Source: Botryllus schlosseri
Lineage: Eukaryota
Length of the DNA: 64,000 bases
Direction: 5' to 3'
Assembly (NCBI GenBank): GCA_051294905.1
Contig: CM119375.1
Location: 9,548,001 to 9,612,000 of the forward strand
Below, in pieces: positions 19,585-49,599 of the stretch (positions are counted from its first letter, which is position 1; each line of letters begins with the position of its first letter). Below the pieces are notes generated by a model. The model did not search any database. It was not told where the DNA came from and was given only the letters and a program-made list of their open reading frames with translations. A program made the position numbers and the translations under genes.

Positions 19585-22500
19585 TTAGTAAAATTTTTCA
19601 CACAGGTAATGAAAGGTTTTACTGCAAATATTGTCGTTGAGCCTTTCATTTTGATTGTGATAGTTCACGAGTTCGACACATCTTTCAGGTGCTGTATCCG
19701 GTTGATTCGGTAACCAATCAGTGTTTTCTCTGTTGGACACCACCCCATCAAGCCAGACATAATGGTTCATGCGCTCCAGGTCATCCAGTCCGATCCAGAT
19801 GCTAGTCGATCCCGATGAATTCCGTACCACGGCCTTGACTTGTCTGCATTATAATTTCATCGATTTACCAGCCGGTGTATTACCGATTGAGCGTTCCTTC
19901 CTGGGTTACCATCAAACGCCATGTTGCCGGTAACAAATCTGCTAACAATGATTACACTGGGCAACAATTTTGAACGAAAAATTTGTTGACTTTGATTTTG
20001 CACTTGATTTAGGCAAATTTTGGCGTGCTGATTCCAAAAACGCCATTGGTTTTCTTCTATCACGTCAAGTTTTTGCTCTACGACATATGCCCAAAATATG
20101 CAAATTTTCACGGATTTAGCCATATAACTTTTCCATACCATATAAAAATCCACACTTTTTACCATATTAACTTATAGAGCCAAGGGCTCAATTAAATTAT
20201 GAAGAAAAAAAGGTACTGGTATCGATCTATAGGCCGATGGTTTCACCCATACTTGGTTAGAGGATGCAACCATCCGAGGATATTTCAGACACATATTTCA
20301 TGCAAACTGCAGGATATGGCAAAAAAATATACATTACATTTCATATCAGCTATAGGTCTAATGCCCCATTCAGCATAACATGTGTAACTTGATACTGATA
20401 TATTCTCGATAATTTGGATCAAGATGACGATCTTAGAGATAGCAGGCCTAATGATGAAGATTTGTCTCGAGTCAAAGTGTCCAATGACTCGAGATGAGTT
20501 GTGACTCGAAGGTAGTGACTTGATTCCAACACTTCCTGGTGTACAGTGTATAGTTGGGACGATGTAATTACGACGTACCGGTACCATGCTGTTAGTAAAA
20601 TTAGGACTAACGTGGATAGGAAAGCACCGCATCGGTACAAGTTTCATGACCGGGTGTGTCAGGGGGAAGCATGACACCTATTTACTTTTGTCCCGTTTTG
20701 ATTCTATCTACTCAATGGTGAATAAACGGCTTCATGTAACGGTAGAATGCTTCTTATGTAATTTAAAATCAATCACGTTATATCCTAAAGGCCAAGTCCA
20801 ATATTGTAATCGGTAATACGATCTCATGTCAGCAATGCCATCATAGCCTACCGCCTTTCGGTATTGGCTACGACGCTACGTCAACATTCGAAACGGAGAG
20901 GGGACCTTATAGGATTCAGATATCTTCCCGTGTGCTCTACCACATATTGTAATATTGAATACATAAATTGGATTTCAGGTTGTCTACTTATAGCAGGGGT
21001 GGGCAAACTTTTGAGCTCGCGGGCCGCATTCAACATCTCAATCCATTCGCGGGCCGCACTATTTAAAATTGGAATTATAAACCAAAACACAATAGTGGTA
21101 TTTGACTAGCCCATATAGTGAGGACATGGGGAAGCTTATTTAAAACAAACCAGGCATTGCTTTGATGATATCGTACATGCCTCAGAAACAGTGGCGAGAT
21201 TTCATAGGCTGCTCGACCTCCATAACCAATTTGTCAAAAACTATAGAGATGAAAGTCGGTGGTCCTGATTCTTAGAACAGGATTCAAATTTAAATCTGTC
21301 AGCAGCGATCTGTTCATAGATTTGCAAATTTCACTTTTGGTTTAGTTCAAGGACACACAATACTGACAGCATCATAACCATGTTAGCTTCAAACACGCTT
21401 CTTCTGTTTGTAGATAAATATATATACCCTAATTCTACGCATACAGAGAACGAATCTACCTAGACACGTGCGAATCGTTTTTATAAGCACATCACTGAAA
21501 TATTCAAAACTGGAGTGGCCAATCTGAAATCACACCCGTGATCCGAATTATGTCAATCTTTAAAATCGGGCTGTCGCGCCAGACATTAAACATAAAAAAT
21601 GATATAGGAAGCATTAACCTTAGAACAGTGGTTCTCAAACTTTGCAAGTCACGCCCCTTTATGATGGTGCAAGATTTCGTGTACCCCTTATCGTCATATC
21701 ACAAAACGTAACCAGGATCCTAGCAAACCTAACAGGTAGTTTGATGGCATGGAAGGCTACGAATGTGGAGTAGAGATTTTTAAATATAAAATTCAGACCA
21801 AATACACAGCAATATTTTGCGTATTGAATGTAAATCGCGCGGAGCGCGAAAAGAATATTCAGTTGATCTCAGCTTCGCGCCCCTCTTCAGATGCTTTCAC
21901 ACCCTCAAGGGGGCGCGCCCCCCAGTTTGCAACCCACTTCCTTAAAATTAGCATGATGAAATATACTAAAAAGTTCAATCAAGTCCCAGCATTAATTCGA
22001 TTTTTAGTACGCATTTTATCAATATTTTTATTAAGGTTCTTTAGACGCTCGCGGGCCGCACAGAACGGTGTTGTGGGCCGCATGCGGCCCGCGGGCCGTA
22101 GTTTGCCCACCCCTGACTTATAGGATGTATATTTTATAGGTAAACTACGGGGTATATGAAAACGGTCTCGAGCCATCCCGAACTACCTTTTTGTCATTTC
22201 CTTTCGAAATGTTAAGTTCGAGTTCAAAGTGAATTCCTAACGACAGGCTCACCTCCTTCGATATACCCTGTATAAAAGTTATTGGCGACGCAGGTATCGC
22301 AATAACCAACATCCGTACCAGTTTAAACTATGGACATCGATACGAATTTGAGTCAGTCCGAAACAATATGCTGCAGCATCGTGATATGCGCTGCGGAGAA
22401 AGTCACAAAACCGGTGTCTTCGCCAAACGGTTAGATCTCAGGATTGTTCAGTGTTTGTCGCTTTCCAGTGTGGAGTCGAGACGTTCGATTCCGTGATAAG

Positions 22501-25141
22501 ATAGTTTGATGTAACTTTAATGGTGATATGTGCAATTTGCATATCTCTCTATCTCGACGGTCGGCTGACTTCCCTTTGTGTATAAGTAAACAATGTTTAT
22601 GGTACGGTCACATATCGTTTATGGTCTATTCACATTGAAACCATCATACATCAGGCTTTCGGGGGTCAGATAAAATGGCCTAGCGGCTAACATTTGTCCC
22701 ACGGTGACTAGTGTCACAGCCCTGACTTCTAATACACTGGTCTACAAATTTCAATTTTTTTTCAGGTTTGGGTTTTGACAACTGATTTTGGCAAATTTTG
22801 GGGCCTTGAATCCTAAAATGGCCTCAGATTTTCTGCATCACATCACGTTTTTGAGATATGAAATATCCCTAATTTTTGAACAAAATCAATTTTTGACCCC
22901 CCCTCTACTTTCAAAACAAGGAATTCCGATGCAATAAATACTGTTTTATCTGTAATAATCCAGATTTAATTAGCAAACTAGCATTCTATATTAGATTCAC
23001 ACAAATTTGCGTTGTACGACATATTCCCTTCATAACATCAGTTGACAACTATATAAAGTTCGATCTCGGCGTGACTGCTGGACCGTGATGTTTTTGTGGA
23101 AATGTCAATACATTACAGCTCCATTACGGTGGCGTTCTGAAGAAAACGGCTGCGGCCAATTTTTTTTTCGTTTCGCCCTTCAGTTTGAGACCACATCATT
23201 TGAGTGCAGGACTCCTTTAACTGTTTCTGAACTCGCCCTGCCCAAGTCCCTGTCTTCAGAATTTCTGCACTTCATCGGAATGTGTATATGCATATTGTGT
23301 GAACTGTAAGCTATAATTCCGATAATACCTTGGTACTGTCCTATCGACATGTTCGTCAGCATATTGTAGCGTTTGATTTCATTATGGTTGCTTTTTTGCG
23401 TGACTATTTTTTATGCCAGGGCATGAAATTTTAATAAAGACAACGCTAATTTGTGTGAATCTAATATAGAATGCTTCTTTGCTAATGAAAGATAGATTAT
23501 TGCAGGTAAATCAGTATTTATTGTATCACAATTCCTTGTTTTGACAACAGTGGGGGGTAAACCATTCATATTTTTTTAAATTAGCGATATTTCATATCTC
23601 AAAAACGTGATGTGATAGAGAAAATCTGAGGTCATTTTCGGATTCAAGGCCCCAAAATTAGCCAAAACCTGTTGTCAAAAAAACCCAAACCTGAAATTTT
23701 GTGTATACCAGTGTTATCGATGAAGGGGTAGCGAGGGTAGGCTTGTGTCATCTGGATACTTACTCCCTCACATGTGGAATACGCATGCCAACACACGCGA
23801 GAGTCGCCTGGACGGCTTCGCATGCCGCCCTCGCCTGTTGATATGTCTTTGCCTCTTTGAATAACTGGTAGCCGTAAATGTTTGATCCGTAAGATATCCA
23901 TTTCCAATCTCGATGCGTCAATAAGTCGAACATCATTAACTCTGAAGAATAGTTGTGCACTATTGCAACACGAAAGAAATGTAATGAGAGCGCATGCGAA
24001 GTAGTTATTAACCGATATTCCTATTTATAAGATGAACCCTCAAAATCACCATACATTACGAAGCTTACTGCGTTGAAAACTTAATCATACATCGCTGTTC
24101 GTTGCTGATGGACAAAGATGCCTAGGTCAGAAATAACGTATTTGTACTATTTAAGGGTAACCAAGAGGGTATTATAACTCGGATTATTATTTTTAAAGAA
24201 ACCGAATAGCTTAGGTAATTGGTTTTCATACTGTTATTGTTGATGGCAGCCTGGTCAATTCTAAGTTGTACAAATTTAAAGATGTAGAATTGCATTGGTA
24301 CTACAACATCCTGATCGCATAAAATGCGCAATAGTCTACTAAAGTCAGATGATGTTAACAATACGCCGAGGAGATACTGACTTCGCACAAGCGTGACGCG
24401 GATGCTACGAACGGAACAAGAAGACCAATATTTTCACAGGTTTCAGGAAGCACTGCGCCCTAAATATCATGTGATATCAAATTAGAGAGAAAATCGGGAA
24501 ATTATATTTGACCGCAGTCAGTTTCGCCAGATAGTCGCCATAACGGAACTGAAAGTAAAAGATAATTCAAACTATCCCCACGCTAGCTGCACAAATATAT
24601 TTCAATGGTGGCAGCCTGTTTGGGATCCGTTGGCTTAGGTAGATTAACAATGTACATTGTTGTAGACATCAAAATCGTTTTAACCAATTGTAATTCGACT
24701 ATACCGTCATCTCTTACCCGCGTACATTTCAAACGCTTTGTTATGTTCAAGTCGTTCTGGACCGCATTTATTACTGCTTCCTGTATTCCTGTTTCTAAGT
24801 AGAAGGTTCACACATTTCTGATTCGAATTGACTATATAGCCTGATTGACTAGTTTGACTATTTCGGGATACATTACTTTGTGACGTCGCTAGTTCGGAGC
24901 AGTCGCACATTCCAGACTCCCCCTTTTCTCCTTTGCTCCCATTGATACCGATTCGGCCATCTCGTCCAGGTTCCCCTGCATTTCCTTGGCTTCCTTTGAT
25001 TCCGGCCTTGCCTGGTCGTCCAGGAGGCCCGATGATCTGCTCAGTATCATCCTGATCGCAGCAGCAATGTCCGTGAACGAGACGAAGGAACGATAGGTAT
25101 GTTAAAAGGACAAGGACCAGGTGACGTAGCATCTCAGACAT
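19585..25141 (-). CDS. Collectin-like lectin A (signal peptide, CCC, 13 Gly-X-Y, C-type lectin domain with QPD)
   Basis: Inferred exons 25141-24877, 24404-24378 (27-nt micro-exon, least certain), 23941-23764 and 19843-19585. GT-AG splice phases are compatible and give an open frame ending LCEKFY*. Canonical CTLD cysteines, IWIGLDD, WLPNQPD, LND. Confidence 0.88.
20994..22115. mobile_element. Buster-type hAT MITE with a nested MITE at 21626-21939
   Basis: TIRs CAGGGGTGGGCAAAC / GTTTGCCCACCCCTG, TSD ACTTATAG. The nested element CAGTGGTTCTCAAAC has TSD CCTTAGAA/CCTTAAAA. Confidence 0.9.
22735..23713. mobile_element. CACTGG-ended element with long imperfect terminal inverted repeats (mirror 46775-47753)
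   Basis: CACTGGTCTACAAATTT...AAATTTTGTGTATACCAGTG ends, with >150 bp of inverted subterminal homology. TSD unclear. Confidence 0.65.
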
Positions 25142-26183
25142 ATCTGACCTATGCAGCCTCAATGTAACGTGGCTGTGACCTGATTCAGGCTGCCCTGCTC
25201 GTTTATATGTAACTAGTGTTGCTATGCATTTTTTCAAATTACTCTCTCCCTTGAGAATTCGAGACTAACGTTTTCAAACAATTAGAGCCATTAATATAAG
25301 CTTTTTTCCTTGTTGACATGAATTATTATCCACAATTAATCTCTATTTATGTCCACATGATATGCCGGAACGTGGTATTGTCGGCACCATCCACATGAAA
25401 TAACTATTTTCTGTTAATGTTTTTAAATATCCAATTTGAATTTACATTTAAAACGAAAATATGTCCTAAACGATTTTTAAAGGATTAATTTTGAACGCGT
25501 GTGCTTTGTTGCTGCTACTACTTCAAATTGGGTCCATGTGACAGTCTCAGTTCCGGGTGCAATGATCACAGGCATAGCAAAAAGGGAGGGGTGGTAGGAA
25601 ATTATGGGAGAGTGGGCAATACCAGGGAGTCGAAATGCAATATTGGAGCCCTGGCTGCAAGATAACTTCATTTATAATTACTCCCAACGGGAGATGAGCG
25701 AAATACGTAGTTTTGCATTTAAAACAAAAATCAATTTAAAACAAACATGTTTAAAACAGGGTCATAATTTAAAACATGTTTTTTGTTGTTTTTTAGACAC
25801 GACGTCGATTATTTTCAATCGTGACGCCGCAATGGGCTGACATCGTTACATGGTTTCTTAAGAATTACAATTGAAAATATAGCTTTCAGTACAACATCCA
25901 TTGTAGTAGAAAATTTAATAAACTAGAAGACTTTTCGGGTGCCTCTTTTCAAGAGTCAACGGCAGAAAAAATTACTACAATGAGTGTTGCATTGAAAGCT
26001 ATATTCAAGTTCTGTACCACGGACCGGCTATTTAATTGAAAATATAGGGTAAATATGGATCATTTGGCGAGTTTCCGAGTCGTCTTCACCGGACCACAAA
26101 ACCTCTTTTACCAGGACTACATCGTCATGCAGCATTTTTTACGGTCAGCGGTCATCATCATCATAACATTAATTCCGACACAG

Positions 26184-26608
26184 CAGTGGTTCCCAACCGG
26201 TGGGGAATTGTCCATGCCCACTAGAGGGGAACAGACGCATTTGCAAAATAACTACATGCAATATATACATATGTACGGAGGCATAACACCACGATGACGG
26301 TTACTAGCTCACTGCTCTGGAATATGCGTAGGTAATTTTAACGCGTGTTGTCCACAAAAACTCATTTCGAACTCTGAATAACCAATATTGGGCACACAAA
26401 CACATTTACTAGATACGCAAGAATTTTTATGTTGCAGTAACAGGCGATTGTTCACTTCAACAGTCAGACGTTGCGAAACAAAGTCTAACCGAATTTTATT
26501 GGATGGAGGATTTCAAGTGTTCAATAGCGGGATTTTAGTTTGTAGGGAATAAAAGGAACTGAAAAAATCAGAAGTGGGGAATGAAGGAAAAAAGGTTGGG
26601 AACCACTG
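26184..26608. mobile_element. Buster-type hAT MITE (mirror 44009-44457)
   Basis: TIRs CAGTGGTTCCCAACC / GGTTGGGAACCACTG, degenerate TSD. Confidence 0.8.
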
Positions 26609-26707
26609 CAATACAGTGATATATAACTACATGTTATAATTGTTGAACCGACGACGATTTCGCGGGCTCCAGCCATTCCATGTCGTATACGTCGACTATA
26701 TCTAGAG

Positions 26708-27572
26708 CGGTGGTTCTCAACCTTTTTGTCTTCGCGGGCCCCTTTTGCACCTTAACCCCCCAAGTTTTAGTAAATATTTAGGTCAATAATAGTGCAAGCA
26801 TCATTTGACTTGTGCAAATACTAACTGCATGGTAGTAATCAACAGCAATAAAATGATTTTTCTTGAAAATAACATCGTAATATTTATATAGAAAGTGGGA
26901 AAACTTTTATTATTTCAAAGCGAATTCTGTAGCTGCGCGCGTTTCTTGAAATACGCGGCTGAATGATGAAAATCCGCGCCGTCGATTTGATATGTGCGAG
27001 TGCCGAAATACATTTCCACAAAGATGTTGGCGAATGTGATAATAATGCGTAACGCACCCGACGACACCTTCGGGTATTTGATCGCAAGTTGCAACATATA
27101 TCACACCAGAATTGAGAAGATATTGTTAATGAACATATAACGCCCAGCCTCGTCGTTTCTATCCATCAACCCATCAGTTCTTTTCAATATATCGCAATCC
27201 TGTGGTGTAATGATTTGATAATAATTTCAATAATACGGTGATGATGAAAAATGAAGTTATTCTGGAAAAGCGGTTATGTTTATCAAAGGAGAATATGGTT
27301 TTTGCAAACAAATCTTTCCAAAACCCAAACAAAACATCTCTAAACATTATGTTTAGACTATTGGCAATTAAAATGAGTTTGCACAGAATAATATTGCATA
27401 CTAGATGGCCATTCTGTTTATGTGGATCCCGAAGATTAAGCAGTTGTAGCGAAACTGCCTCGTGATGTCTCTTATTAAAAAATATACAAGCTAGGTTATC
27501 AATCACTTTGCAAATTTGGAGGCTCGCGGACCCCCTGAAACTGATTCGCGGACCCCCGGTTGAGAACCGTTG
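26708..27572. mobile_element. Buster-type hAT MITE (mirror 43136-43909)
   Basis: TIRs CGGTGGTTCTCAACC / GGTTGAGAACCGTTG, TSD ATCTAGAG/ATCTCGAA. Confidence 0.8.
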
Positions 27573-28007
27573 ATCTCGAATTCTTATACTACATCTTTTT
27601 GCATACAATATTATACAACTTTTTAAAAATATAATTATTTTTAACGACATGTGTTTTGAAACACCTCTTGTTTCAAATGCAGCCGTAGATATATACGACT
27701 GCATCCAGTCTCTCTTCTGACCAGCTTCCTCGCAACCATTTCCCCGATGCGTCCCAGCTGGCTAATCGACTGCAGTTTCTGTTGTAGGTTTGGTATTTCT
27801 GGTCATTAGACAGATCTTTGTTATTTGATTCCTTATCAGTCGACTTTTAACATGACCCTATTTCACTTTAGGTTTTTTTAAGATACCGAAGTTTGACAAT
27901 ATGTCTGCTCACGTAACGATAATTTGTTGATAGCCAATGCCAACGCGAGCGATAGATGAGATAATTATAGATATGTGGCGATTGGCTAGCACTTTCATTG
28001 CTTATAC

Positions 28008-29395: not shown

Positions 29396-31095
29396 TGTAC
29401 ATTGCCGAGAATGTATGTTACCAAGAATGCTATTACCGAGAATGGACATTGACATTACATTACACTTTCAGACAATGCTGTGATTTGATTCATAGATATT
29501 TCATATGCATTAACTTACATAGGCTAGCATAGTGGAAAATAGAATCAAAACTATAACTCTATTTGACAAATTAACTATTAATGGCAAGGAGCGTATAATT
29601 TCAGTACTCGAAAAAATCGTCTCGGTGCTCGAAGCATTGTGTGCAGCTGGGGCCCCGGCCCAGCCCCCCATATATTTTTAGTGGCAATAAGTACATCGCA
29701 TCCACATTCACAAAGAGGGAAATCTCTTCTTTCCAAATGCCTTGAGTAGGTCCCGTTGTCTAAGTACTGCAACTGCAATTCGGATTCATGAGTGCCATTC
29801 CTTCGTTCACCGCGTCAGAAGAACGCCTTCAGCGACAAAGAAACCGCAACAGCTACTGACAGCTATGCTAAATGAATCAGAGTGACCTCAGTAATCTCAG
29901 CTAAACTCGGTGTTGATTTGAACAGATAGTTTCGCTACATTACAGATACCTCTCAGAATGATTTTTTATACGATATGCAATATTCCAGATCAACCTCAGA
30001 GCTCAATTGTCTCTTCGCTCATCACCACAATGGTTTGCAGGAACATGTTCGTTACATTCCTGATCGTTCTCAGACCGATTATGCAAAACTCTGACCGAAG
30101 GCTATTCATATAAACATACCGTAGCGTACATCTGAAGTACATCTGAAGATATTACGGCTGACGTGAAAGATGTTGAAAATGCATATGAATTAAGTTTGCA
30201 AGTTTTATTTTTGTGTCTCTGACATGGGCTATGACTGCATAACAGAAAAAAGGACTCAATATACATATGTTTCCGAATAAGTATGTATGAAAGCTATTCA
30301 TGAGAACAAACTGTAACTGTTTATGACTAATAGATCGGTAGATATCGCGGTATATGTGTGACGATACGCTCAAAGTGACGAGGGCAGCAGCAATCAGTTA
30401 ATAAAACTTTTTACAAAGGTGATGAAAGGTTAAACTGTAAAAATTATCGTTTAGCTTTTGATTAACAGAGTTCATTAGTTCGACACATCTTTCAGATGCT
30501 GTATTCGGTTCGGTCGATGACCAATCAGTGTTTTCTCTGGTGGACACCACCCCATCAAGCCGGACATATTGGCCCTTGCGCTCCAGGTCATTCAGTCCGA
30601 TTCAGATACCTCCCGATCCCGATGACCGCACTATACCTTGGATTTTACACTTCTGTATCAGAATTTCATCGGTTTACCGTTCTATATATATAACCCAGTT
30701 CAGCCCTGGTATACATCTACATAAAAAATGATATAGTTGACTCGTTGGTGGATATTTGGAAAATACGCGATTTTCATTTACAACGCCCTTATAAATGGCG
30801 CCTGGATAGGCCTATTTTATCAAAATACTTACTCCCGCACAGCTGGAATACGCATTCCTACGCACGCGAGCGTCGACTGGGCAGCTTCGCATGCCACCCT
30901 CGCCTCCTGATAGGTTTTTCCCTCCTGAAATAGCTTGTAGCCGTATATGTTTAATTCGTGAGATATCCATGTCCAATCTCGATGCGTTAATATTTCAATC
31001 GTCATCAACTCTGCATAACAGTTACGTATTTCACATATTAGCATGAACGAAAAGTAATGTAATGAATCTGGCGATACAATACTTACCATATAGAC

Positions 31096-32114
31096 CAGGG
31101 GTCGGGAACCTTTTTCGTCCGAAGAGCCATACTGACCCTATATTTGCCATTTTAACTCCCAAAGAGCCATACATTTTAATCAAATACTACGTCACAATTG
31201 TAGAATCGTGACGTCATGGTAGCGCCACACATGGGATTCCTCGTTTGCACCGTATATTATCTGTAACAACTCGTACTAATCATGCTAAACATTATCACTA
31301 CACAGCAGCATACATAACCACTGTAATGTGTGATGCGTCAGTGACGTGGTGTCAGAGGATGCACGTGAGGCAGTGCCTTACCTGTCTACTAGATTTTGAA
31401 TATTTTTACTACGAAATTCACAACTTGTCTATTTATTGTTCGAAAATATAGCGTGACAGGAGAGGTAAGGCATTGGTAAGGCACGGCCGGGATTAGCGTA
31501 GCGCAATTGATCATGACTATCATAAAATTTATAAAAACTGATAAATAATCGAATGTAATTGTCGAGTCCGATTCGATTTCTCAATTCTCAAAGTACTCGG
31601 TGGTAACACAACGTTGTGCCACACGCCTACATTTGAACAGCAACTACAAAGCAACTACGATACGTTGAATTTGTAAATGTAAATGTCACTATCACGTCAG
31701 TTCACTGCTCGCCGTAGATCAAGAAGACAATGTGCATTTGAAAACTGCATTGTCACATAGGCGTCGCCTTGTCTGCTATTTTCATTGATCAATCAAGGTA
31801 TCGTGCAATTCGAGATTTGGAATCGGATACATCCAAATTCGGGAGTGATATTAGTCGCAGGCGAGACAGCAACTTAAATTTGAAGATTTTGAAAAGGGGT
31901 CCGAGCCCCTAACCGCGAATACGCAAATGTATTAACCTCTCAAGGGCATATTTATACTGTCACAAAAATATTTGTACTGGTCGTGTTGAAGATTTATTAA
32001 CAAATTGCTGCAATATTGATAAATGAAGCACATATATAAAAGTTTCGCAAAGAGCCATACTTTATGCCCAACATAGCCATATATGGCTCGCGAGCCATAG
32101 GTTCCCGACCACTG
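31096..32114. mobile_element. Buster-type hAT MITE (mirror 37128-38146)
   Basis: TIRs CAGGGGTCGGGAACC / GGTTCCCGACCACTG, TSD ATATAGAC. Confidence 0.92.
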
Positions 32115-32202
32115 ATATAGACCTACTTCTCTCGATGAAGTCAGTCCTACAAATCATTATGATTACCAAAACTTACCCCGCTGAATTTGGATCCTTATAA
32201 AG

Positions 32203-32680: not shown

Positions 32681-33114
32681 TTATCAAAGATGTTGCTAGA
32701 TTTACTGTTGTAACGTATTTCTACCTTTAGCTATTATTAGTTATCATCGGGCCGCATTATTTTTGGCATATCACAAAAATACCAAAAATAGCTTATTTTT
32801 GACATTTTGCAGATTTTATTTTCGCAAGATTTGGCATCACCAGGAATATATATTTGTATACTCGAATTAACGTTGTAAAACGCTATGTAGTGTAATCTAT
32901 CATATTAAACGAAAGTTGCAAAACGTGCACTATCCACTTCGTGTCATCAAACCGCGGTATAGTAAAAACCGAATTGACAACGGTGTTGGAAAGTCAATTC
33001 ACCCAATACAAAACAGACCGACTGCTTTTGCAATATCTAATTCGAATAGTGATTCGAAATGCATTCATAATTACCTGGATTCACATTTGAATCACAGCCC
33101 TTCACTCTCTAACC

Positions 33115-38845: not shown

Positions 38846-41237
38846 CTGATCGCTGCTTCCCTCGTCACTTTGAGCGTATTTGTCACACATATACCGCGAT
38901 ATATACCGATCTATTAGTCATAAACAGTTAAAGTTTGTTCTCATGAATAGCTTTCATACATACTTATTCGGAAACTTATGTATATTGAGTCCTTTCTTCT
39001 GTTATGCGATCAATGCCGATGTCAGAGACACAAAAATAAAACTTGCAAACTAATTTCATACGCATTTTCAACATCTTTCACATCAGCCGTAATATCTTCA
39101 GATGTACTCAACTTACTGATCATAGACATGTACGGTATGTTTATATCAGGGGCGGGCAACTTCTCCAGTCTGCGGGCCGGATATAGGAAAATTAGGTACT
39201 TGGCGGGCCGAATTTCTAGATCGATACATTATCCGCCCATTTAGCCATATATACAATAAGGAATAAATCGTATTTAATGAATGTATTTTAACAACAGCAA
39301 TATCATTTCAAAGCCAATTCTCGTCGATAATGAAGGCGTTCTTCTGGCGCGGTGAACGAAGGAATGGCACTCATGAATCCGAATTGCAGTTGCAGTACTT
39401 AAACAAAGGGGCCTACACAAGGCATTTGGGGAGGAGAGATTTCCCTCTCTGTGAATATGGATGCGATGTAGGCCTACTCATTGCCACTAAAAATCTATGG
39501 ACGGCTGGACACAATGCTTCGAGTACCGAGACGATTTTTTTCGAGAACTGAAATTATACGCTCCTTGCCATAAATAGTTAATTTGTCAAATAGAGTTATA
39601 GTTTTGATTCTATTTTCCACTATGCTAGCCTTGAAACCGAGATTGGTCGTATCGCAGCACACGAACCGCAGTACAAAGCTATGTAAGTTAATGTAAATGA
39701 AATATCTGTGAATCAACCCACAGCAATGTCTGAAAGTGCGTGAAAGAGTTATGGTCGAAAAATACAAAATTATTTTCAATGTGATGTAGAACTAGGACTG
39801 ATGTTCCTTGCGGTGTCACAAATGGTAATTATTTGAACTTCCCACTTTCTTACATGCTGTTATCTCATCAAAAAGAGTGATACTCGAACACTCGACCCGA
39901 CCCGAAGCCTTACTCGATCCAAGGTCGAATTATCCAGGCAATAAATTTTGCCCAGCTCTAGATATGTGATATGATATCCGTAGACAACTTTATGTTGTCT
40001 TGGTGTGCAAAACACGGATGGGGACGTTTATTTAACTCTTTGTTGAGACCAGGATCATTAGATTCGAACTAAGTAACACTAACGAATATCCAAAAAAGAC
40101 GTATAATATTTTATATATTCGAGCAGACGGCAATTTATATGCAGAGGTAGTTAGTGTGGCTAGATAAGCTAGCAATTTTTGGGAGTACTCATATGTCACC
40201 ACTATAGAGACAGAGGGAAATTCAAAGAAAAAGAAAGGTGGTGGTTCTATTTGTGTTTGAGTACACGCTGATCAGAACACTCCAAACACCATACGTAACC
40301 TTGAATACAGTCATTTGCTGGGGAACGCTACATTGTGGTTTCGTTTTTTTGACTTGGGCTGCCTTGGCCACTATCTCTGGTTTGCTGGGGTTATTGTTGT
40401 TGTTGTTTTTGGTATTCGTGGTATTTGTCGACTACTGTGGTTATTTCCACCGGTTCAATAGTCTTTAGTATTATGCCGTATCTGCCGACTTGTAGCACCG
40501 ACCATTTCTAGGCTTTTTTAAAGACGCCGCTTACGCGGATCAGATGGCGTGGAGGAACTTAGATAAACCTCCAACCCTTGTGAAGCAATTCTGGAATCGA
40601 CCTTGGTCGGAACCTATTGGTTTTGCAGCTGTGGATCCACTATGTCTGGCTTGACGGGGGAAAATAGAGGAAACACTATATGGTATCGCGGTTAGCCGAG
40701 CTCAGAGTATGTACGATCACTACGATGTGGCCAAATCGTCCAATTAAAAGAAAGTATGGGGGTTTAACGATAATGCGTGCGGCGGAACCTTGCGCTATCT
40801 CTGTGAAAAATATCATTAATTATACGCAGACGTGCATTCTTAGGCTCATTCACGGCACAGCCTTGTTGTACTTTTTCCGACCATTCAAGTAGTTTACCTA
40901 ACTTGCACCATTTACTCGCGTGGCTTTACTTTTATACTACTTGGATTTTGAATGGTCTTTGAAATGAACTAACTCATTTTTCACATTTAGCCGCGTAACC
41001 CTCGGATGGATTCAAGTCATTCATAATAGCGTAATCACTAGGGTTGAACACAATAATTCGAGTATACTCCAATTCGAATCGGGTATATTAATTATAATGT
41101 GGAGCGGTCAGAGATTATGTTTTCAAGTACTGAATTATTAGATGATATTTTCCACCATAGAAGCCTGGAGGAACATATTGTAATTGTGAAACTTGTCGCC
41201 GTCTATTGAGAAATAAAAGTTGTCAGAGCGTCATTAC

Positions 41238-42420: not shown

Positions 42421-45334
42421 TGCTAACCTCGATTCTTTGGAGATTATTGCTCGCAAACGAACCTTAAAAGGTTCTTCACGTATGTACATTTTTTGAATTT
42501 CGATATTAACGTGGATTATCGAGCTACATACCTGTTATAGGCACTGTATTAGTATCGATGACAGTGAAGTCGATTCCAGCATATCAATCATTCTCCCATC
42601 TCGCGCCCGTGTTGGTAATGGCTATCAATAAATCATTATTACGCTTAAGGTTAGCAAACAACATGCCTCCGATCGACGAAGAATTAGTAGTAGCAATGAA
42701 AGTGCTAGCCGATCGCCATATATCTATAATTATCTCATCTATCGCTCGCGTTGGCATTGACTATCAACAAATTATCGTTACGTGAGCAGACATACTGTCA
42801 AACTTCGGTATCTTACAAAAACCCAAAACGAAAGTGGGTCATGCTAAAAGTCGACTGATAAGGAATCAAATACCAAAGATCTGTCTATAATGGCTATGAA
42901 TACCAAAACTACAACAGAAACTGCAGACGATAAGCGAGCTGGGACGAATCGAGGAAATAGTTGCGAGGAGCTGGTCAGAAGAGAGGCTGGGGGCAGTCGT
43001 ATATATCTACGGCTGCATTTGAAACAAGAGGTGTTTCAAAACACATGTCATTAAAAATAATTATATTTTTAAAAAGTTGTATAATATTGTATGCAAAAAG
43101 ATGTAGTATAAGCATTCGAACCACATACAATAGATCAGCGGTTCTCAACTTGAATTTTTTTTAAATTAGAGAAATCGCGAGGCAGTTTCGCTACATAACT
43201 GCTTAATCTTCGGGATCCACATAAACAGAATGGCCATCTAGTGTGAAATATTATTCTGTGCAAACTCCTTTTAATTGCCAATAGCCTAAACATAATGTTT
43301 AGAGATGTTTTGTTTGGGTTTTGGAAAGATTTGTTTGTAAAAACCGTATTCTTCTTTGATATACATAACCGCTACTCCAGAATAACTTCATTTTTCATCA
43401 TCACCGTGCTATTGAAATTATTATCAAATCAATACATCACAAGATTGCGATATAATGAAAAGAACTGATGGGTTGATAGATAGAAACGACTAGGCTGGAC
43501 GTTATATGTTCATTAACAATATGTTTCTCAATTATGGTACAAAATATGTTGCAACTTGCGATCAAATACCCGAAGTTGTCGTCGGATGCGTTACGCATTA
43601 TTATCATATTCGCCAACATCTTTGTAGAGATGGATTTCGGCACTCGTTCATATCAAATCGTTCATTCATCACTCAGCCGCGTATTTCAAGAAACGCGCGC
43701 AGCTACAGAATTCGCTTAGAAACAATAAAAGTTTTCCCACTTTCTATATAAATATTATGATGTTATTTTCAAGAAAAATCATTTTATTGCTGTTTATTGC
43801 TACCATGCAGTTAGTATTTACATAAGACAAATGACGCTTATATCTACTAAAACTTGGGGGGTTAAGGTGCAAAAGGGGTCCGCGAAGACAAAAAGGCTGA
43901 GAACCACTGCACTAGATATAGTCGACTTATACGACATGGAATGGTTGGAGCCCGCGAAATCATCGTCGGTTTGACAATTATAACATGTAGTTATATATCA
44001 CAGCATCGCAGTGGTTCCCAACCTTTTTTCCTTCGTTCCCCACTTCTGATTTTTTCAGTTACTTTTATTCCCTACAAACTAAAATCTCTCTATTGAAAAC
44101 TTGAAATCCTCCATCCAATAAAATTCGGTTAGACTTTGTTTCGCTGAGTCTTGCCGTTGGCGAGAACAATCGCCTTTTGTTGCAACATAAAACTTCCTGT
44201 GTATCTACTAAATGTGTTTGTGAGCCCAATATTGGTTTTCCAGAGTTCGAAATGAGTTTTTGTGGACAACACGCGTTAAAATTACCTACGCATATTCCAG
44301 AGCAGTGAACTAGTAACCGTCATCGTGGTGTTATGTCTCCGCACATATATGTATTTGTATATATTGCATGTAGTTATTTTGCATTTGCGTCTATTCCCCA
44401 GCAGATATCTCTGAATTCCCCACTAGTGGGTAATTCCTCGCCGGTTGGGAACCACTGCTGTATCGGAATTGATGTCTGATGAGTATGATGACCGCTGACC
44501 GTACAAATGCTGCATGACGAGGTATTCCTGGTAAAAGAGATGTTGATAGTTCGGTGAAGACGGCTCGGAAACCTCTTTCACCAAAAGAGCCATATTGACC
44601 CTATATTCGCAAATGCAATTCTTAAGAAACCGTATAATAATATCAATCCATTGTGGCGTCAAAATTGAAAATTCCCGACGTCTTGGCTAAAAAAACAATA
44701 AAAAAACATGTTTTAAATAAGGACCTTGTTTTAAACATATTTGTTTTAAATTGATTTTTGTTTTAAATACAAAACAACGTAGTTCGCTCATCTCCGGTTG
44801 GGAGTAACTCTAAATGAACTTATCTTGCAGTCAGGGCTCCAATATTTCATTTCGACTCCCTGGTATTGCCCACTCGCCCATAATTTCCTACCACCCCTCC
44901 CTTTTTGCTATGCCTGTGATCATTGCAGCCGGAACTGAGACTGTCACATGGACTCAATTTGAGGTAGCAGCAGCAACAAAGCACACGCTTTCAAAATTAA
45001 TCCTTTAAAAATCGTTTAGGACATATTTTCGTTTTAAATATAAATTCAAATTGGATATTTAAAAACATTAACAGAAAATAGTCATTTCATGTGACTGCTG
45101 CCGACAATACCACGTTCCGGCATATCATGTGAACATAAATAGGGATTAATTGTGGATAATAATTCATGTCAACAAGGAAAGAAGCTTATATTAATTGTTT
45201 CAAAACGTTAGTCTCGAATTCCCAAGGGAGAGAGTAATTTGAAAAAATGCATAGCAACACTAGTTACATATAAACGGGCAGGGCAGTCTGAATTCGGTCA
45301 CTGCCACGTTACATTGAGGGTGCATAGGTCAGAT

Positions 45335-48300
45335 ATGTCTGAGATGCTACGTTACCTGGTCATTGTCCTTTTGACATACGAATCGTTCCTTCATCTCGTT
45401 CACGGACATTGCTGCTGCGATCAGGAGGATAGTGAGCAGATCATCGGACCTCCTGGACGACCAGGTAAGGCCGGAATCAAAGGAAGCCAAGGAAATGCCG
45501 GGAAACCAGGAAGAGATGGCCGAATCGGTATCAATGGGAGCAAAGGAGAAAAGGGGGAGTCTGGAATGTGCGACTGCTCCGAACTAGCGACGTCACAAAG
45601 TAATGTATCCCGAAATAGTCAAACTAGTCAATCAGGCTATATAGTCAATTCGAATCAGAAATGTGTGAACCTTCTACTTAGAAACAGGAATACAGGAAGC
45701 AGTATTAAATGCGGTCCAGAACGACTTGAGCATAACAAAGCGTTTGAAATGTACGCGGGTAAGAGATGATGGTATAGTCGAATTACAATTGGTTAAAACG
45801 ATTTTGATGTCTACAACAATGTACATTGTTAATCTACCTAAGCCAACGGATGCCAAACAGGCTGCCACCATTGAAATATATTTGTGCAGCTAGCGTGGGG
45901 ATAGTTTGAATTATCTTTTACCTCCAGTTCCGTTATGGCGACTATCTGGCGAAACTGACTGCGGTCAAATATAATTTCCCGATTTTCTCTCTAATTTGAT
46001 ATCACATGATATTTAGGGCGCAGTGCTTCCTGAAACCTGTAAAAATATTGATCTTCTTGTTCCGTTCGTAGCATCCGCGTCACGCTTGTGCGAAGTCAGT
46101 ATCTCCTCGGCGTATTGTTAACATCATCTGACTTTAGTAGACTATTGCGCATTTTATGCGATCAGGATGTTGTAGTACCAATGCAATTCTACATCTTTAA
46201 ATTTGTACAACTTAGAATTGACCAGGGCTGTTCAAGGGGCGCCATCAACAATAATAGTATGAAAACCACTTACCTAAGCTATTCGGTTTCTTTAAAAATA
46301 ATAATCCGAGTTATAATACCCTCTTGGTTACCCTTAAATAGTACAAATACGTTATTTCTGACCTAGGCATCTTTGTCCATCAGCAACGAACAGCGATGTA
46401 TAATTAAGTTTTCAACGCAGTAAGCTTCGTAATGTATGGTGATTTCGAGGGTTCATCTTATAAATAGGAATATCGGTTAAAAACTACTTCGCATGCGCTC
46501 TCATTACATTTCTTTCGTGTTGCAATAGTGCACAACTATTCTTCAGAGTTAATGATGTTCGACTTATTGACGCATCGAGATTGGAAATGGATATCTTACG
46601 GATCAAACATTTACGGCTACCAGTTATTCAAAGAGGCAAAGACATATCAACAGGCGAGGGCGGCATGCGAAGCCGTCCAGGCGACTCTCGCGTGTGTTGG
46701 CATGCGTATTCCACATGTGAGGGAGTAAGTATCCAGATGACACAAGCCTACCCTCGCTACCCCTTTATCGATAACACTGGTATACACAAAATTTCAGGTT
46801 TGGGTTTTTTTGACAACAGGTTGTGGCTAATTTTGGGGCCTTGAATCCGAAAATGACCTCAGATTTTCTCCATCATATCACGTTTTTGAGATATGAAATA
46901 TCGCTAATTATAAAAAAAATATGAATTGTTTACCCCCCTCTGTTGTCAAAACAAGGAATTCTGATACAATAAATACTGATTTACCTGCAATAATCTAGCT
47001 TTAATTACCAAAGAAGCATTCTATATTAGATTCACACAAATTAGCGTTGTCTTTATTAAAATTTCATGCCCTGGCATAAAAAATAGTCACGCAAAAGATC
47101 AACCATAATGAAATCAAACGCTACAATATGATGACGAACATGTCGATAGGACAGTACCAAGGTATTATCGGAATTATAGCTTACAGTTCACACAATATGC
47201 ATATACACATTCCAATGAAGTGCAGAAATTCTGAAGACAGGGACTTGGGCAGGGCGAGTTCAGAAACAGTTAAAGGAGCCCTGCACTCAAATGATGTGGT
47301 CTCAAACTGAAGGGCGAAACGAAAAAAAAATTGGCCGCAGCCGTTTTCTTCAGAACGCCACCGTAATGGAGCTGTAATGTATTGAAATTTCCACAAAAAC
47401 ATCACGGTCGAGCAGTTAAGCCGAGATCGAACTTTATATAGTTGTCAACAGATGTTATGAAGTGAATATGTCGTACAACGCAAATTTGTGTGAATCTAAT
47501 ATAGAATGCTTGTTTGCTAATTAAATCTGGATTATTACAGATAAAACAGTATTTATTGCATCGGAATTGCTTGTTTTGAAAGTAGAGGGGGTTCAAAAAT
47601 TGATTTTTTTCAAAAATTAGGGATATTTCATATCTCAAAAACGTGATGTGATGCAGAAAATCTGAGGCCATTTTAGGATTCAAGGCCCCAAAATTAGCCA
47701 AAATCAGTTGTCAAAACCCAAACCTGAAAAAAATTGAAATTTGTAGACCAGTGTATTAGAAGTCAGGGCTGTGACACTAGTCACCGTGGGACAAATGTTA
47801 GCCACTAGGCCATTTTATCTGACCCCAGAAAGTCTGGTGTATGATGGTTTCAATGTGAATAGACCATAAACGATATGTGACCGTACCATAAACATTGTTT
47901 ACTTAAACACAAAGGGAAGTCAGCCGACCGTCGAGATAGAGAGATATGCAAATTGCACATATCACCATTAAAGTTACATCAAACTATCTTATCATGGAAT
48001 CGAACGTCTCGACTCCACACTGGAAAGCGACAAACACTGAACAATCCTGAGATCTAACCGTTTGGCGAAGACACCGGTTTTGTGACTTTCTCCGCAACGC
48101 ATATCACGATGCTGCAACATATTGTTTCGGACTGACTCAAATTCGTATCGTTGTCCATAGTTTAAACTGGTACGGATGTTGGTTATTGCGCTACCTGCGT
48201 CGCCAATAACTTTTATACAGGGTATATCGCATGAGGTGAGCCTGTCGTTAGGAATTCACGGCGGTATAGGCTACGATGGCATTGCTGACATGAGATCGTA

Positions 48301-49599
48301 TTACCGATAACAATATTGGACTTGGCCTTTAGGATATAACGTGATTGATTTTAAATTACATAAGAAGCATTCCACCGGTACATGAGGCCGATTATTCACC
48401 ATTGACAAGATAGAATCAAAACGGGACAAAAGTAACAAGGTGTCATGATTCCCCCTGACACACCCGGTAATGAAACTTGTACCGATGCGGTGCTTTCCTA
48501 ACCACGCCCGTCCTAGTTTTACTACCAGCATGGTACGCCGTACTTACATCGTCCCAACTATACACTGTACGCCAGGCAGTGTTGGGATCAAGTCACTACC
48601 TTCGAGTCACAAGTCATCTCGAGTCATTGGACACTTTGACTCGAGACAAATCTTCATCATTAGGCCTGCTATCTCTAAGATCGTCATCTTGATCCAAATT
48701 ATCGAGAATATATCAGTTTCAAGTTACACATGATATGTTGAATGGGGCATTAGACCTATAGCTGATATGAAATGTAATGTATATTTTTTTGCCATATCCT
48801 GCAGTTTGCATGAAATATGTGTCTGAAATATCCTCGGATGGTTGCATCCTCTAACCAAGAATGGGTGAAAACATCGGCCTAGATCGATACCAGTACCTTT
48901 TTTCTTCATAATTTAATTGATCCCTTGGCTCTATAAGTTAATATGGTAAAAAGTGTGGATTTTTATATGGTATGGAAAAGTTGTATGGCTAAATTCGTGA
49001 CAATTTGCATATTTTGGGCATATGTCGTAGAGCAAAAACTTGACGTGGTAGAAGAAAACCAATGGCGTTTTTAGAATCAGCACGCCAAAATTTGCCTAAA
49101 TCAAGTGCAAAATCAAAGTCAACAAATTTTTCGTTCAAAATTGTTGCCCAGTGTAATCATTGTTAGCAGATTTGTTACCGGCAACATGGCGTTTGATGGT
49201 AACCCAAGAACGCTCAATTGGTAATACACTGGTGACTGAAGTATAAATAAGTGAGGAGTGAGATATCCCACAATTTAACGTCAGTGATGAAATAACCAAA
49301 TTTATATATAGGCTGGTAAATCGATGAAATTATAATGCAGACGTGTCAAGGCCGAGGTACGGAAATCATCGGGCTCGACTAGCATCTGGATCGGACTGGA
49401 TGACCTGGAGCGCATGAATCATTATGTCTGGCTTGATGGGGTGGTATCCAACAGAGAAAACACTGATTGGTTACCGAATCAACCGGATACACCAGAGGAA
49501 AGATGTGTCGAACTCGTGAACTATCACAATCACAATAGAATGCTCAACGACAATACTTGCAGTAAAACCTTTCATTACCTGTGTGAAAAATTTTACTAA
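45335..49599 (+). CDS. Collectin-like lectin B (inverted paralog of A, QPD-type)
   Basis: Inferred exons 45335-45599, 46072-46098, 46547-46724 and 49341-49599, giving an open frame. Same architecture as A. Confidence 0.88.

What the first reader, a model, noticed from the sequence alone, without database searches (positions are those of the whole stretch)
19585..49599. Collectin twins: one CTLD exon is 100% identical while the sugar-binding exon diverges at the ligand loops
Seen in sequence: the 178-nt first CTLD exons (23764-23941 and 46547-46724) are nucleotide-identical. The 259-nt second CTLD exons differ at 9 codons non-synonymously but only 3 purely synonymously. Six of the 9 changes lie directly after QPD (T-AP vs T-PE) and around LND (QNER-LND-NI vs HNRM-LND-NT), and several are multi-nucleotide changes. 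Established knowledge: these segments form Ca2+ site 2 and the carbohydrate-binding surface. Inference: diversifying selection on ligand specificity alongside conversion or constraint on the scaffold exon.
Basis: partly seen in the sequence, partly recalled or inferred. Interest (0 to 1): 0.7.

Follow-up and report, generated by a model that had tools for sequence, protein, structure and literature searches.

The report
Inverted collectin-like gene pair, partly homogenised
Two sea-squirt immune-lectin genes sit head-to-head on the arms of an inverted duplication; a gene-conversion patch has made their middle identical, their ends keep older differences, and this ordinary pattern shows no significant sign of selection for new sugar specificities.

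Summary
Exons 23764-23941 and 46547-46724 are identical, but as reverse complements. The third exons differ at 9 non-synonymous and 3 synonymous codons, and 6 of the 9 lie beside QPD and LND.

The genes (A, minus strand; B, plus strand) are three-exon, 233-aa collectin-like lectins. Each has a signal peptide, a CCC motif, about 14 Gly-X-Y repeats and a QPD C-type lectin domain. They lie on the outer arms of a roughly 31-kb inverted duplication in an eight-copy ascidian gene cluster.

The identical exon is part of a 284-bp perfect run that reaches into both introns. That run sits inside a low-divergence tract (0-2.5%) with a sharp 5' edge at 45512/45513. Baseline divergence between the arms is about 8%. 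Scaled to outgroup paralogs, about 27 differences are expected in codons 60-148 and 1 is seen (P about 1e-10). This points to gene conversion, not constraint on the exon.

Exon 3 is no more diverged than its non-coding flanks, and its dN/dS is 0.75. The ligand loops evolve near omega 1 across the whole subfamily, against 0.29 for the scaffold. My M1a-versus-M2a test is not significant. Multi-nucleotide changes are as common in the introns.

Diversifying selection is therefore unsupported but not excluded. Reading A and B as alleles is unlikely. This is a new member of a known kind.

The parts
45335..45599 (+). Gene B exon 1: signal peptide, CCC motif, about 14 Gly-X-Y repeats (45446-45571), CxC, short neck. 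Donor is CAAA|GTAATG.
   Evidence: ORF and sequence. Gly-X-Y scan. Pfam Collagen 31.6 bits against a cut-off of 27.2. An RNA-derived contig of run X10 joins 45599 directly to 46547 (table 8, record 1). The same donor is conserved in paralogs P3, P4, P5 and P8.
46547..46724 (+). [quoted passage not shown] Exact reverse complement of 23764-23941.
   Evidence: Splice sites CAG| and |GTAAGT.
49341..49599 (+). Gene B exon 3: second half of the lectin domain (WIGL, QPD-TPE-E, HNRM-LND-NT) plus the stop codon.
   Evidence: Pfam Lectin_C E = 1.3e-12.
24877..25141 (-). Gene A exon 1. Eight amino-acid differences from B, all in codons 7-57.
23764..23941 (-). Gene A exon 2, identical to B exon 2.
19585..19843 (-). 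Gene A exon 3 (QPD-TAP-E, QNER-LND-NI) plus the stop codon.
45513..48260 (.). Low-divergence (converted) tract on the B arm; the partner on the A arm is 24963 down to about 22229. Divergence is 0% in exon 1 3' part, 1.6% in intron 1, 0% in exon 2 and 2.5% in intron 2a. The 5' edge at 45512/45513 is sharp and the 3' side decays gradually (4% in intron 2b).
46482..46765 (.). The 284-bp perfect-identity run (partner 23723-24006). It holds exon 2 plus 65 nt and 41 nt of intron.
19055..28002 (.). Outer left arm of the inverted duplication, carrying gene A. Weaker homology continues to about 18616.
   Evidence: Self-BLAST. MAFFT identity profile.
42692..50138 (.). Outer right arm, carrying gene B. 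Weaker homology resumes at 52682-52796 after a repeat-rich insertion.
   Evidence: Repeat depth in bins 50201-51200.
30136..39108 (.). Inner near-perfect palindrome, with its centre near 34622 in an AT-rich tract and a spacer of about 10 nt. There are no mismatches for about 1.9 kb on each side, then divergence rises to 5-6% at the outer ends.
30313..31010 (-). Copy C: an EPN-type lectin-domain relic (exon-2-like 30833-31010, exon-3-like from 30652 downward). It has a +2 frameshift, a TGA at 30602-30604 in WIGL, a Cys-to-Tyr change and no exon 1. It is a pseudogene.
38232..38931 (+). Copy D: an EPN-type lectin-domain copy (exon-2-like 38232-38409, exon-3-like 38590-38931). The canonical donor is changed from GT to GA. 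A donor 4 nt downstream would restore the frame. No exon 1 was found.
20856..22228 (.). 1.37-kb insertion in intron 2 of A that is absent from B.

Best explanation
A and B are two real paralogous genes for secreted, short-stalk collectin-like C-type lectins of an ascidian. Each is 233 aa, with a signal peptide, a CCC motif, about 14 Gly-X-Y repeats, a short neck and a QPD-type lectin domain. They lie head-to-head on the outer arms of an old inverted segmental duplication whose neutral divergence is about 8%.

After the duplication, one or more arm-to-arm gene-conversion events overwrote a tract running from the middle of exon 1 through intron 1 and exon 2 into intron 2. That is why exon 2, and 106 nt of intron around it, are identical. 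The two ends of the gene lie outside or at the fading edge of the tract and keep the older divergence. These ends are the signal peptide and N-terminus, and exon 3 with the 3' flank.

Within exon 3 the amino-acid differences pile up in the loops around Ca2+ site 2. Those loops are the least constrained part of the domain throughout this eight-copy subfamily (omega about 1.2, against about 0.3 for the scaffold). Directional selection need not be invoked.

Shown here: the gene structures, the inverted arrangement, the divergence mosaic, the excess homogeneity and the omega values. Inferred: conversion as the mechanism, relaxed constraint as the cause of loop divergence, and the proteins' lectin function.
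For: - Inverted arms and a nested palindrome.
- Intact three-exon reading frames with conserved splice sites in A, B and four upstream paralogs.
- A spliced exon 1-exon 2 contig in run X10.
- Pfam Lectin_C and Collagen hits. The nearest named proteins are Styela clava 'collectin-10/11-like', at up to 45% identity (42-45% for the closest clusters).
- The divergence mosaic by feature: 8% upstream, 7.9% in exon 1 5' part, 0%, 1.6%, 0%, 2.5%, 4.0%, 4.8%, 8.0%, 5.1%.
- The best low-divergence segment has a likelihood ratio of 103.
- The perfect run includes intron sequence.
- Outgroup-scaled expectation of 26.6 differences in codons 60-148 against 1 observed, P about 8e-11.
- Exon 3 omega of 0.75; scaffold 0.25; loop 4.1, not significant.
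- Family maximum-likelihood omega of 1.24 for the loop, 0.29 for the scaffold and 0.45 for the N-terminus plus collagen.
- M1a vs M2a not significant.
- Clustered mismatches are equally common in non-coding DNA.
- Two loci rather than alleles: in runs X3 and X5 there are exactly two sequence classes over the 3' region. One is 0-2% from B and the other 5-6% from B with indels. Contigs that run into the unique flank have the depth of one class. The arms also carry different large insertions and end in different flanks.
Against: - A is the only candidate donor for the tract and no conversion event is observed directly. A later partial re-duplication would leave a similar mosaic.
- The 3' decay of identity is gradual, so one event with clean ends does not fit. 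Several events, or conversion followed by new mutation, must be assumed.
- If nucleotides are counted and the local 5.1% flank is taken as neutral, the loop has more changes than expected (9 in 66 non-synonymous sites, P = 0.006). The excess disappears if codons are counted as events (P = 0.12) or if the 8% baseline is used (P = 0.09).
- With ten invariant positions inside the loop segment, a segment-wide omega of 1.2 implies omega above 1 at the variable positions. Six sequences cannot test that.
- No raw DNA reads were available, so copy number rests on contig depths. Those are only indicative.
- Expression of B itself is not shown. Raw RNA reads in X23 carry only the A-type or ancestral letters at 45427, 45503 and 45508.
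Confidence: 0.68

Rival explanations
1. One reading: gene conversion or constraint keeps the scaffold exon identical, while positive diversifying selection drives the Ca2+-site-2 loops of A and B towards different glycan specificities.
For: - Non-synonymous codons are concentrated in the loop segment (6 of 27 vs 3 of 58, P = 0.026).
- Loop pairwise omega is 4.1 and family loop omega is 1.24, even with ten invariant positions inside the segment.
- The primary motif itself switches among paralogs: QPD, QPS, EPS and EPN.
- Both A and B carry derived loop changes when polarised with outgroups.
- Both loop types are present in an independent sample: X5 has C and G at 49492 at equal depth.
Against: - No test reaches significance: exon 3 omega 0.75; loop omega P = 0.34; loop omega not different from 1 (2dlnL = 0.2); M1a vs M2a 2dlnL = 2.5, with no site above posterior 0.82.
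- Exon 3 is as diverged as the surrounding non-coding DNA.
- Multi-nucleotide clusters are a general feature of the arm alignment.
- The signal peptide and N-terminus have as many replacements as the loops.
- The B-type CCAGAG letters were not seen in X3 or X10. Contigs can drop variants, so this is weak.
Confidence: 0.2
2. A and B are the two haplotypes of one locus, and the inverted duplication is an assembly artefact, either a fold-back or a haplotig inserted in reverse.
For: - The inner palindrome has almost no spacer and is perfectly identical for 1.9 kb on each side of its centre, as a fold-back chimera would be.
- Ascidians can be very heterozygous (established knowledge).
- Only contigs were available for the DNA runs, not raw reads, so copy number could not be measured.
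Against: - There are no gaps in the window.
- The arms end in different sequence on the two sides, and each carries its own kilobase-scale insertions.
- Arm divergence of 5-12% with many indels is several-fold above the 0-2% distance between the assembly and other individuals' B-like contigs in the same region (table 8).
- A-like and B-like classes co-occur in X3, X5 and X10 as well as in the assembly.
- Flank contigs have the depth of one class and half the depth of the collapsed stretches in both X3 and X5.
- C and D differ by function-relevant changes (a stop codon, a donor site) that grade with distance from the centre.
Confidence: 0.07
3. Exon 2 is identical only because purifying selection on the scaffold removes all changes, with no conversion involved.
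For: Exon 2 and the scaffold have low omega in the family (0.17-0.54 pairwise; 0.29 by maximum likelihood).
Against: - Synonymous sites and 106 nt of flanking intron are also identical.
- Introns 1 and 2a are at 1.6-2.5% against an 8% baseline.
- Exon 2 dS to outgroups is the highest of the three exons (0.58-0.73).
- 11.3 synonymous differences are expected in codons 60-148 and 1 is seen.
- An expressed A-like contig of another sample differs at 6 of the 178 exon 2 positions.
Confidence: 0.03

Closest known systems
Ascidian collectin-like / MBL-like lectins (Styela clava 'collectin-10/11-like' predicted proteins; Styela plicata collectin-like protein; Ciona MBL-like collectin)
   Same: The architecture matches: signal peptide, Cys-rich N-terminus, short collagen stalk and C-terminal C-type lectin domain. 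The best full-length relatives are Styela clava predicted proteins, at up to 45% identity (42-45% for the closest clusters). Ascidian collectins are reported as inducible humoral lectins of the lectin complement pathway (PMC5465252).
   Different: Identity is at most 45%, so this eight-copy subfamily is lineage-specific. The stalk is very short (about 14 triplets). The motif is QPD with LND instead of EPN with WND. Binding, oligomerisation and MASP interaction were not tested here.
Vertebrate collectins (MBL, SP-A, SP-D, CL-K1/collectin-11)
   Different: Orthology is not shown. Among solved structures, collectin-11 (E about 4e-7) ranks below MRC2, the mannose receptor, DCIR and snake QPD lectins. 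The neck is very short and no coiled-coil was tested.
Polyandrocarpa lectin TC14 and snake-venom Gal-specific C-type lectins (1BYF/1TLG, 1JZN, 5F2Q)
   Same: These are C-type lectin domains with non-EPN motifs that match at E of 1e-7 to 1e-8. The snake lectins share QPD with A and B.
   Different: These lectins have no collagen stalk. Similarity is at the domain level only.
Palindromes with arm-to-arm gene conversion (primate and mouse sex-chromosome palindromes)
   Same: Inverted arms carry a gene pair, arm identity is locally raised by conversion, and multi-kilobase tracts are involved (PMC3723533 and PMC8600007, listed).
   Different: This one is small (about 31 kb), in an immune-lectin cluster and on a chromosome of unknown type. 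Identity is patchy (88-100%) rather than above 99% throughout. The central spacer is only about 10 nt.
Concerted evolution alongside divergence at binding sites in immune multigene families (NK-complex C-type lectin receptors, MHC)
   Same: The mosaic of homogenised segments and divergent ligand-contact segments between neighbouring paralogs is the classic pattern (papers listed, for example PMC2910302 and PMC12674619).
   Different: In those families selection at contact sites is statistically documented. Here it is not.

Membership tests
C-type lectin domain (Pfam PF00059), Ca2+-dependent sugar-binding type | Significant match to the Lectin_C profile over the whole domain | tested here: met
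   E = 1.3e-12, 48.8 bits against a cut-off of 22.6, profile positions 2-107 of 107. 45 solved lectin-domain chains match at E < 1e-5.
C-type lectin domain (Pfam PF00059), Ca2+-dependent sugar-binding type | Conserved cysteines, the WIGL motif, and the Ca2+-site-2 ligands (E/Q-P-N/D, downstream Glu, (W)ND) | tested here: met
   WIGL, QPD, E-RC and LND-N-x-C are present in A and B. C129, C203, C221, C229, W164-I-G, P196 and D218 are invariant or nearly so in a 37-sequence alignment. Trp of WND is replaced by Leu.
C-type lectin domain (Pfam PF00059), Ca2+-dependent sugar-binding type | Actual Ca2+-dependent carbohydrate binding, with galactose-type preference for QPD | not testable with these tools
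   Needs recombinant protein.
Collectin (collagenous C-type lectin) | Secretory signal and a Cys-rich N-terminal segment | tested here: met
   The N-terminus is hydrophobic (MSEMLRYLVIVLLTY...), followed by HCCC. No signal-peptide predictor was run.
Collectin (collagenous C-type lectin) | Collagen-like Gly-X-Y region | tested here: met
   13-14 uninterrupted triplets at 45446-45571 and 24905-25030. Pfam Collagen 31.6 bits against a cut-off of 27.2.
Collectin (collagenous C-type lectin) | Alpha-helical coiled-coil neck that trimerises the lectin domains | not tested
   With the RNA-supported donor at 45599, about 20 residues lie between the last Gly-X-Y and the lectin domain. No coiled-coil prediction or fold was obtained.
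Collectin (collagenous C-type lectin) | Orthology with vertebrate collectin genes | tested here: inconclusive
   Sources name the nearest Styela proteins 'collectin-10/11-like'. Solved collectin-11 is only a mid-ranking hit. No phylogeny was made.
Gene-conversion tract between paralogs | A segment of significantly lower divergence with a sharp boundary, regardless of coding status | tested here: met
   Likelihood ratio of 103 for the best segment. The edge at 45512/45513 separates 7.9% from 0%. Introns are included.
Gene-conversion tract between paralogs | Homogeneity not explained by a locally low rate (outgroup-scaled comparison) | tested here: met
   26.6 differences expected against 1 observed, P about 8e-11. 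Synonymous only: 11.3 expected against 1.
Gene-conversion tract between paralogs | Shared polymorphism or exchanged variants between the two loci in a population | tested here: inconclusive
   Logan contigs collapse simple variants, so the mixed A-type and B-type letters seen in X3 and X5 cannot be interpreted.
Positively selected (diversifying) ligand-binding site | dN/dS significantly above 1 at the site, by pairwise or site models | tested here: not met
   Exon 3 omega 0.75. Loop omega 4.1, P = 0.34. Family loop omega 1.24, not different from 1. M1a vs M2a 2dlnL = 2.5. Power is low with six sequences.
Positively selected (diversifying) ligand-binding site | Excess of replacement over neutral divergence of adjacent non-coding DNA | tested here: inconclusive
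   P ranges from 0.006 to 0.47, depending on the baseline (5.1% or 8.3%) and on whether nucleotides or codon events are counted.

The most novel reading that the evidence does not exclude
The inverted arrangement might work as a device that separates two fates within one gene pair. Arm-to-arm conversion would keep the stalk, neck and scaffold half of the lectin domain identical, so that A and B chains could co-assemble. Selection would stop conversion short of the loop-coding 3' half of exon 3. That would maintain two QPD-type binding surfaces (TAPE...QNER...I vs TPEE...HNRM...T) with different fine specificity. All this sits in a cluster whose members already toggle between QPD, QPS, EPS and EPN.
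Probability: 0.12. Interest if true: 0.5.

Novelty: new member of a known kind. Interest (0 to 1): 0.27.

Why it matters
The finding adds an annotated, RNA-supported gene model for a lineage-specific cluster of eight short-stalk collectin-like lectins in an ascidian. Their sugar-binding motif varies (QPD, QPS, EPS, EPN), which is useful for work on the origin of the lectin complement pathway in chordates.

It is also a compact example of how a conversion patch can produce an 'identical exon beside a divergent exon' picture that looks like selection. The practical lesson is to compare a divergent exon with its own introns and flanks before invoking diversifying selection.

Nothing here changes current understanding of lectin or palindrome evolution.

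Tried and rejected
- The long exon 1 model (donor at 45758, 286 aa), which I used first, was rejected. An RNA-derived contig joins 45599 to 46547, and the other paralogs have stops after that donor.
- Micro-conversion from another paralog as the source of the multi-nucleotide loop changes: the genome has only eight exon 3 copies, all in this cluster. None carries B's CCAGAG or A's or B's version of the loop before LND.
- A copy-number test by read depth was not possible. All DNA holders are kept as contigs only.
- I first read the uniformly A-type letters in X3, and the mixed letters in X5, as homogenisation within each individual. I withdrew this because Logan contigs collapse simple variants (tool note).
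- Exact look-ups of the A and B 61-aa exon 3 reading frames in public contigs found nothing. A word-based protein search with the exon 3 peptide also found nothing. The whole-protein word search found only one unrelated collagen/C1q protein.
I did not resend it, so loop positions rest on sequence alignment to solved lectin domains and on textbook knowledge.
- Site models: my own M0, M1a and M2a implementation on six paralogs gave no signal. Recombination among paralogs and the small sample make this a weak test in either direction.
- Complex prediction was not used. No binding claim is made.
Full report
**1. The observation**

The two 178-nt exons are identical, but as reverse complements. 23764-23941 read on the minus strand equals 46547-46724 on the plus strand. 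The identity does not stop at the exon. The perfect run is 284 bp (46482-46765 = 24006-23723) and includes 65 nt of intron 1 and 41 nt of intron 2.

The 259-nt last exons (19585-19843 minus; 49341-49599 plus) differ at 16 nucleotides in 12 codons. Nine codons are non-synonymous and three synonymous. Three codons carry two or three changes.

**2. What is there**

A self-comparison shows a nested inverted duplication.
- The outer arms are 19055-28002 and 50138-42692, at 88-96% identity. Weaker homology reaches 18616 and 52796.
- The inner block 30136-39108 is a 98.8% self-complementary palindrome. Its centre is near 34622 in an AT-rich tract, with a spacer of about 10 nt.
- Gene A (minus strand) and gene B (plus strand) lie head-to-head on the outer arms.

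The gene model has three exons. For B these are 45335-45599, 46547-46724 and 49341-49599. For A they are 25141-24877, 23941-23764 and 19843-19585.

I first used a longer exon 1 with its donor at 45758. That model was wrong. A contig of run X10 joins 45599 directly to 46547 (table 8, record 1). The CAAA|GT donor is conserved in all paralogs, whose frames close soon after it.

The 233-aa product has these parts:
- a hydrophobic N-terminus;
- an HCCC motif;
- 13-14 Gly-X-Y triplets (Pfam Collagen above its cut-off);
- a short neck;
- a C-type lectin domain (Pfam Lectin_C, E = 1.3e-12) with WIGL, QPD, the downstream Glu and LND.

Solved lectin domains match at E down to 2e-13. They include MRC2, the mannose receptor, DCIR, snake QPD lectins, collectin-11 and the ascidian lectin TC14.

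An exhaustive HMMER search gives Styela clava 'collectin-10/11-like' predicted proteins as the nearest full-length relatives, at up to 45% identity (42-45% for the closest clusters). Collectin-like lectins are already described in Styela plicata, Ciona and Botryllus (PMC5465252).

**3. The subfamily**

The genome holds only eight copies of this exon 3, all within about 107 kb of one contig. Their order is P4, P3, P8, P5, A and C on the minus strand, then D and B on the plus strand.

P3, P4, P5 and P8 have intact three-exon frames of 231-235 aa. The primary sugar motif differs among copies:
- A and B: QPD
- P3: QPS
- P4 and P5: EPS
- P8, C and D: EPN

C and D, on the inner palindrome, have no exon 1 and share a +2 insertion in exon 3. 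C also has a TGA in WIGL and a Cys-to-Tyr change, so it is a pseudogene. In D the canonical donor GT has become GA. The same change removes an in-frame TAA, so a donor 4 nt downstream would restore the frame.

**4. Why exon 2 is identical**

Divergence along the arms is a mosaic:

| Feature (B coordinates) | Divergence |
|---|---|
| Upstream | 7.8-8.5% |
| Exon 1, 5' part | 7.9% |
| Exon 1, 3' part | 0% |
| Intron 1 | 1.6% |
| Exon 2 | 0% |
| Intron 2, first 1.5 kb | 2.5% |
| Intron 2, remainder | 4.0% |
| Exon 3, 5' part | 4.8% |
| Exon 3, 3' part | 8.0% |
| 3' flank | 5.1% |

The 5' edge is abrupt. There are 14 differences in 178 nt up to 45512, then none for 192 nt.

Against the whole-arm rate of 5%, a perfect run of 284 bp has P = 0.0004. 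Inside the local 2% block it is unremarkable (P = 0.13). The thing to explain is therefore the block, not the exon.

Constraint cannot explain the block. Introns share the low divergence. Exon 2 is also the fastest exon at synonymous sites when A or B is compared with P3, P5 or P8 (dS 0.58-0.73). Scaling by those outgroups, codons 60-148 should show about 26.6 differences, 11.3 of them synonymous. One is observed (P about 8e-11).

The most economical cause is arm-to-arm gene conversion after an older duplication. This is the known behaviour of inverted repeats (papers listed). The inner palindrome shows the same process in another form. It has no mismatches for 1.9 kb on either side of the centre, then a steady rise to 5-6%.

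An A-like expressed contig from another sample differs from the assembly at 6 of the 178 exon 2 positions. The exon is therefore not invariant in the species.

**5. Why exon 3 differs**

Exon 3 lies where the converted tract has faded. Its divergence equals that of the non-coding DNA around it.

Pairwise values for A against B:

| Segment | dN | dS | omega | Note |
|---|---|---|---|---|
| Exon 3, whole | 0.061 | 0.082 | 0.75 | Fisher P = 0.75 against omega = 1 |
| Scaffold part | - | - | 0.25 | |
| Loop segment (QPD to LND+2, 27 codons) | - | - | 4.1 | only 0.5 synonymous differences; P = 0.34 |

The loop segment behaves the same way in every paralog pair, with omega between 0.65 and 1.4.

A codon model (GY94) fitted to the six intact genes gives these values:

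| Partition | omega |
|---|---|
| Loop segment | 1.24 |
| Lectin-domain scaffold | 0.29 |
| N-terminus plus collagen | 0.45 |

The loop value is not different from 1 (2dlnL = 0.2), but it is clearly above 0.3 (2dlnL = 13.3).

My own M1a and M2a implementation gives 2dlnL = 2.5. The best site posterior is 0.82.

The multi-nucleotide changes are not special either. 41% of non-coding mismatches in the arms have a neighbour within 3 nt, against 56% in exon 3 (P = 0.30). The random expectation is 26%.

Polarising with outgroups shows derived replacements on both lineages, and as many in the signal peptide and N-terminus as in the loops.

The simplest reading is relaxed constraint on the loops, acting on a part of the gene that conversion has not recently reached.

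Selection at a few loop positions is not excluded. Ten positions in the segment are invariant, so the variable positions must average an omega above 1. Counted by nucleotides against the 5.1% flank, the loop excess has P = 0.006. Counted as codon events, or against the 8% baseline, it is not significant.

**6. Alleles or paralogs**

No raw DNA reads were available, so the depth test I wanted could not be done properly. What the contigs do show favours two loci.
- In X3 and in the independent X5 there are two sequence classes over 49567-49923. One is 0-2% from B. The other is 5-6% from B and has indels.
- Both letters occur at 49492 in X5, at equal depth.
- Both letters occur at 49374 in X10.
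- Contigs running into the unique right flank have the depth of one class, which is half the depth of stretches where the classes collapse.

The arms also have different kilobase insertions (20856-22228 in A; 50278-52682 beside B) and different outer flanks, and the window has no gaps. I put the artefact-or-allele reading at about 7%.

Expression: a spliced A/B-type transcript exists (X10). In the raw RNA run X23, however, reads at 45427, 45503 and 45508 carry only A-type or ancestral letters. Most laid reads come from other paralogs. Expression of B itself is not shown.

**7. Comparison with what is known, and verdict**

By architecture these genes are collectin-like. Orthology to vertebrate collectins is not established. 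The neck, oligomerisation, MASP docking and sugar binding are untested.

The evolutionary pattern is a conversion patch beside older divergence, with most replacements in ligand loops. This is the familiar pattern of clustered immune lectin and receptor genes. Its setting on a small palindrome resembles arm-to-arm conversion in sex-chromosome palindromes.

I classify it as a new member of a known kind. Interest is modest.

Noticed in passing
window 30136-39108 (centre about 34622): The inner palindrome shows a divergence gradient. There are no mismatches for about 1.9 kb on each side of the centre, then 1, 2, 4, 6 and up to 13-14 mismatches per 250 bp towards the outer ends. The spacer is only about 10 nt, inside an AT-rich tract. 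This could reflect centre-biased conversion, a young fold-back event, or an assembly fold-back. No read-level check was possible.
   Followed up: partly
window 38409-38413 (D) vs 30829-30833 (C): C and D share a +2 insertion in exon 3 that breaks the frame under canonical splicing. In D a single T-to-A change turns the donor GT into GA and also turns an in-frame TAA into AAA. A donor 4 nt downstream would then give an intact EPN-type lectin-domain frame. C keeps GT and TAA and has an extra TGA. This looks like a compensatory rescue in one arm only, but neither copy has an exon 1.
   Followed up: partly
C5:9490692-9545097 (loci L009-L015), upstream of the window: Four further intact paralogs (P4, P3, P8, P5) lie on the minus strand. 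Their sugar motifs are EPS, QPS, EPN and EPS. The collagen motif is PGKAGP in P5 and P8, and PGKAGI in A, B, P3 and P4. P8 has a 9-nt deletion in exon 2.
   Followed up: partly
exon 2 and exon 3 alignments of the eight copies: Similarity among paralogs is a mosaic. The first 30-45 nt of exon 2 of A and B are closer to P8, C and D (83-89%) than to P3-P5 (71-82%). In the middle of exon 3 (WIGL...NTDW), B is 98% identical to P3, as close as it is to A. This suggests older exchanges across the cluster.
   Followed up: partly
window 47201-47800, 48401-49200, 50201-51200: Contig depth is extremely high (10^4-10^5) in all DNA runs. Intron 2 of B and its 3' flank are therefore full of high-copy repeats. 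A has an extra 1.37-kb insertion at 20856-22228.
   Followed up: no
window 50037: All three contig runs (X3, X5, X10) lack 4 letters that the assembly has here. This is either a private allele or a small assembly error.
   Followed up: no
window 52682-52796 and 53316-53453: Beyond the repeat block, the right flank resumes homology to the left arm end (18616-18727, 89.6%, inverted) and to A's upstream region (26034-26177, 79%, inverted). No collectin exon follows.
   Followed up: no
window 1-540 / 55716-56251; 1861-2915 / 61555-62634; 11562-12275 / 55243-54510: Further dispersed repeats at 78-87% identity lie between the window ends. They are probably transposable elements.
   Followed up: no
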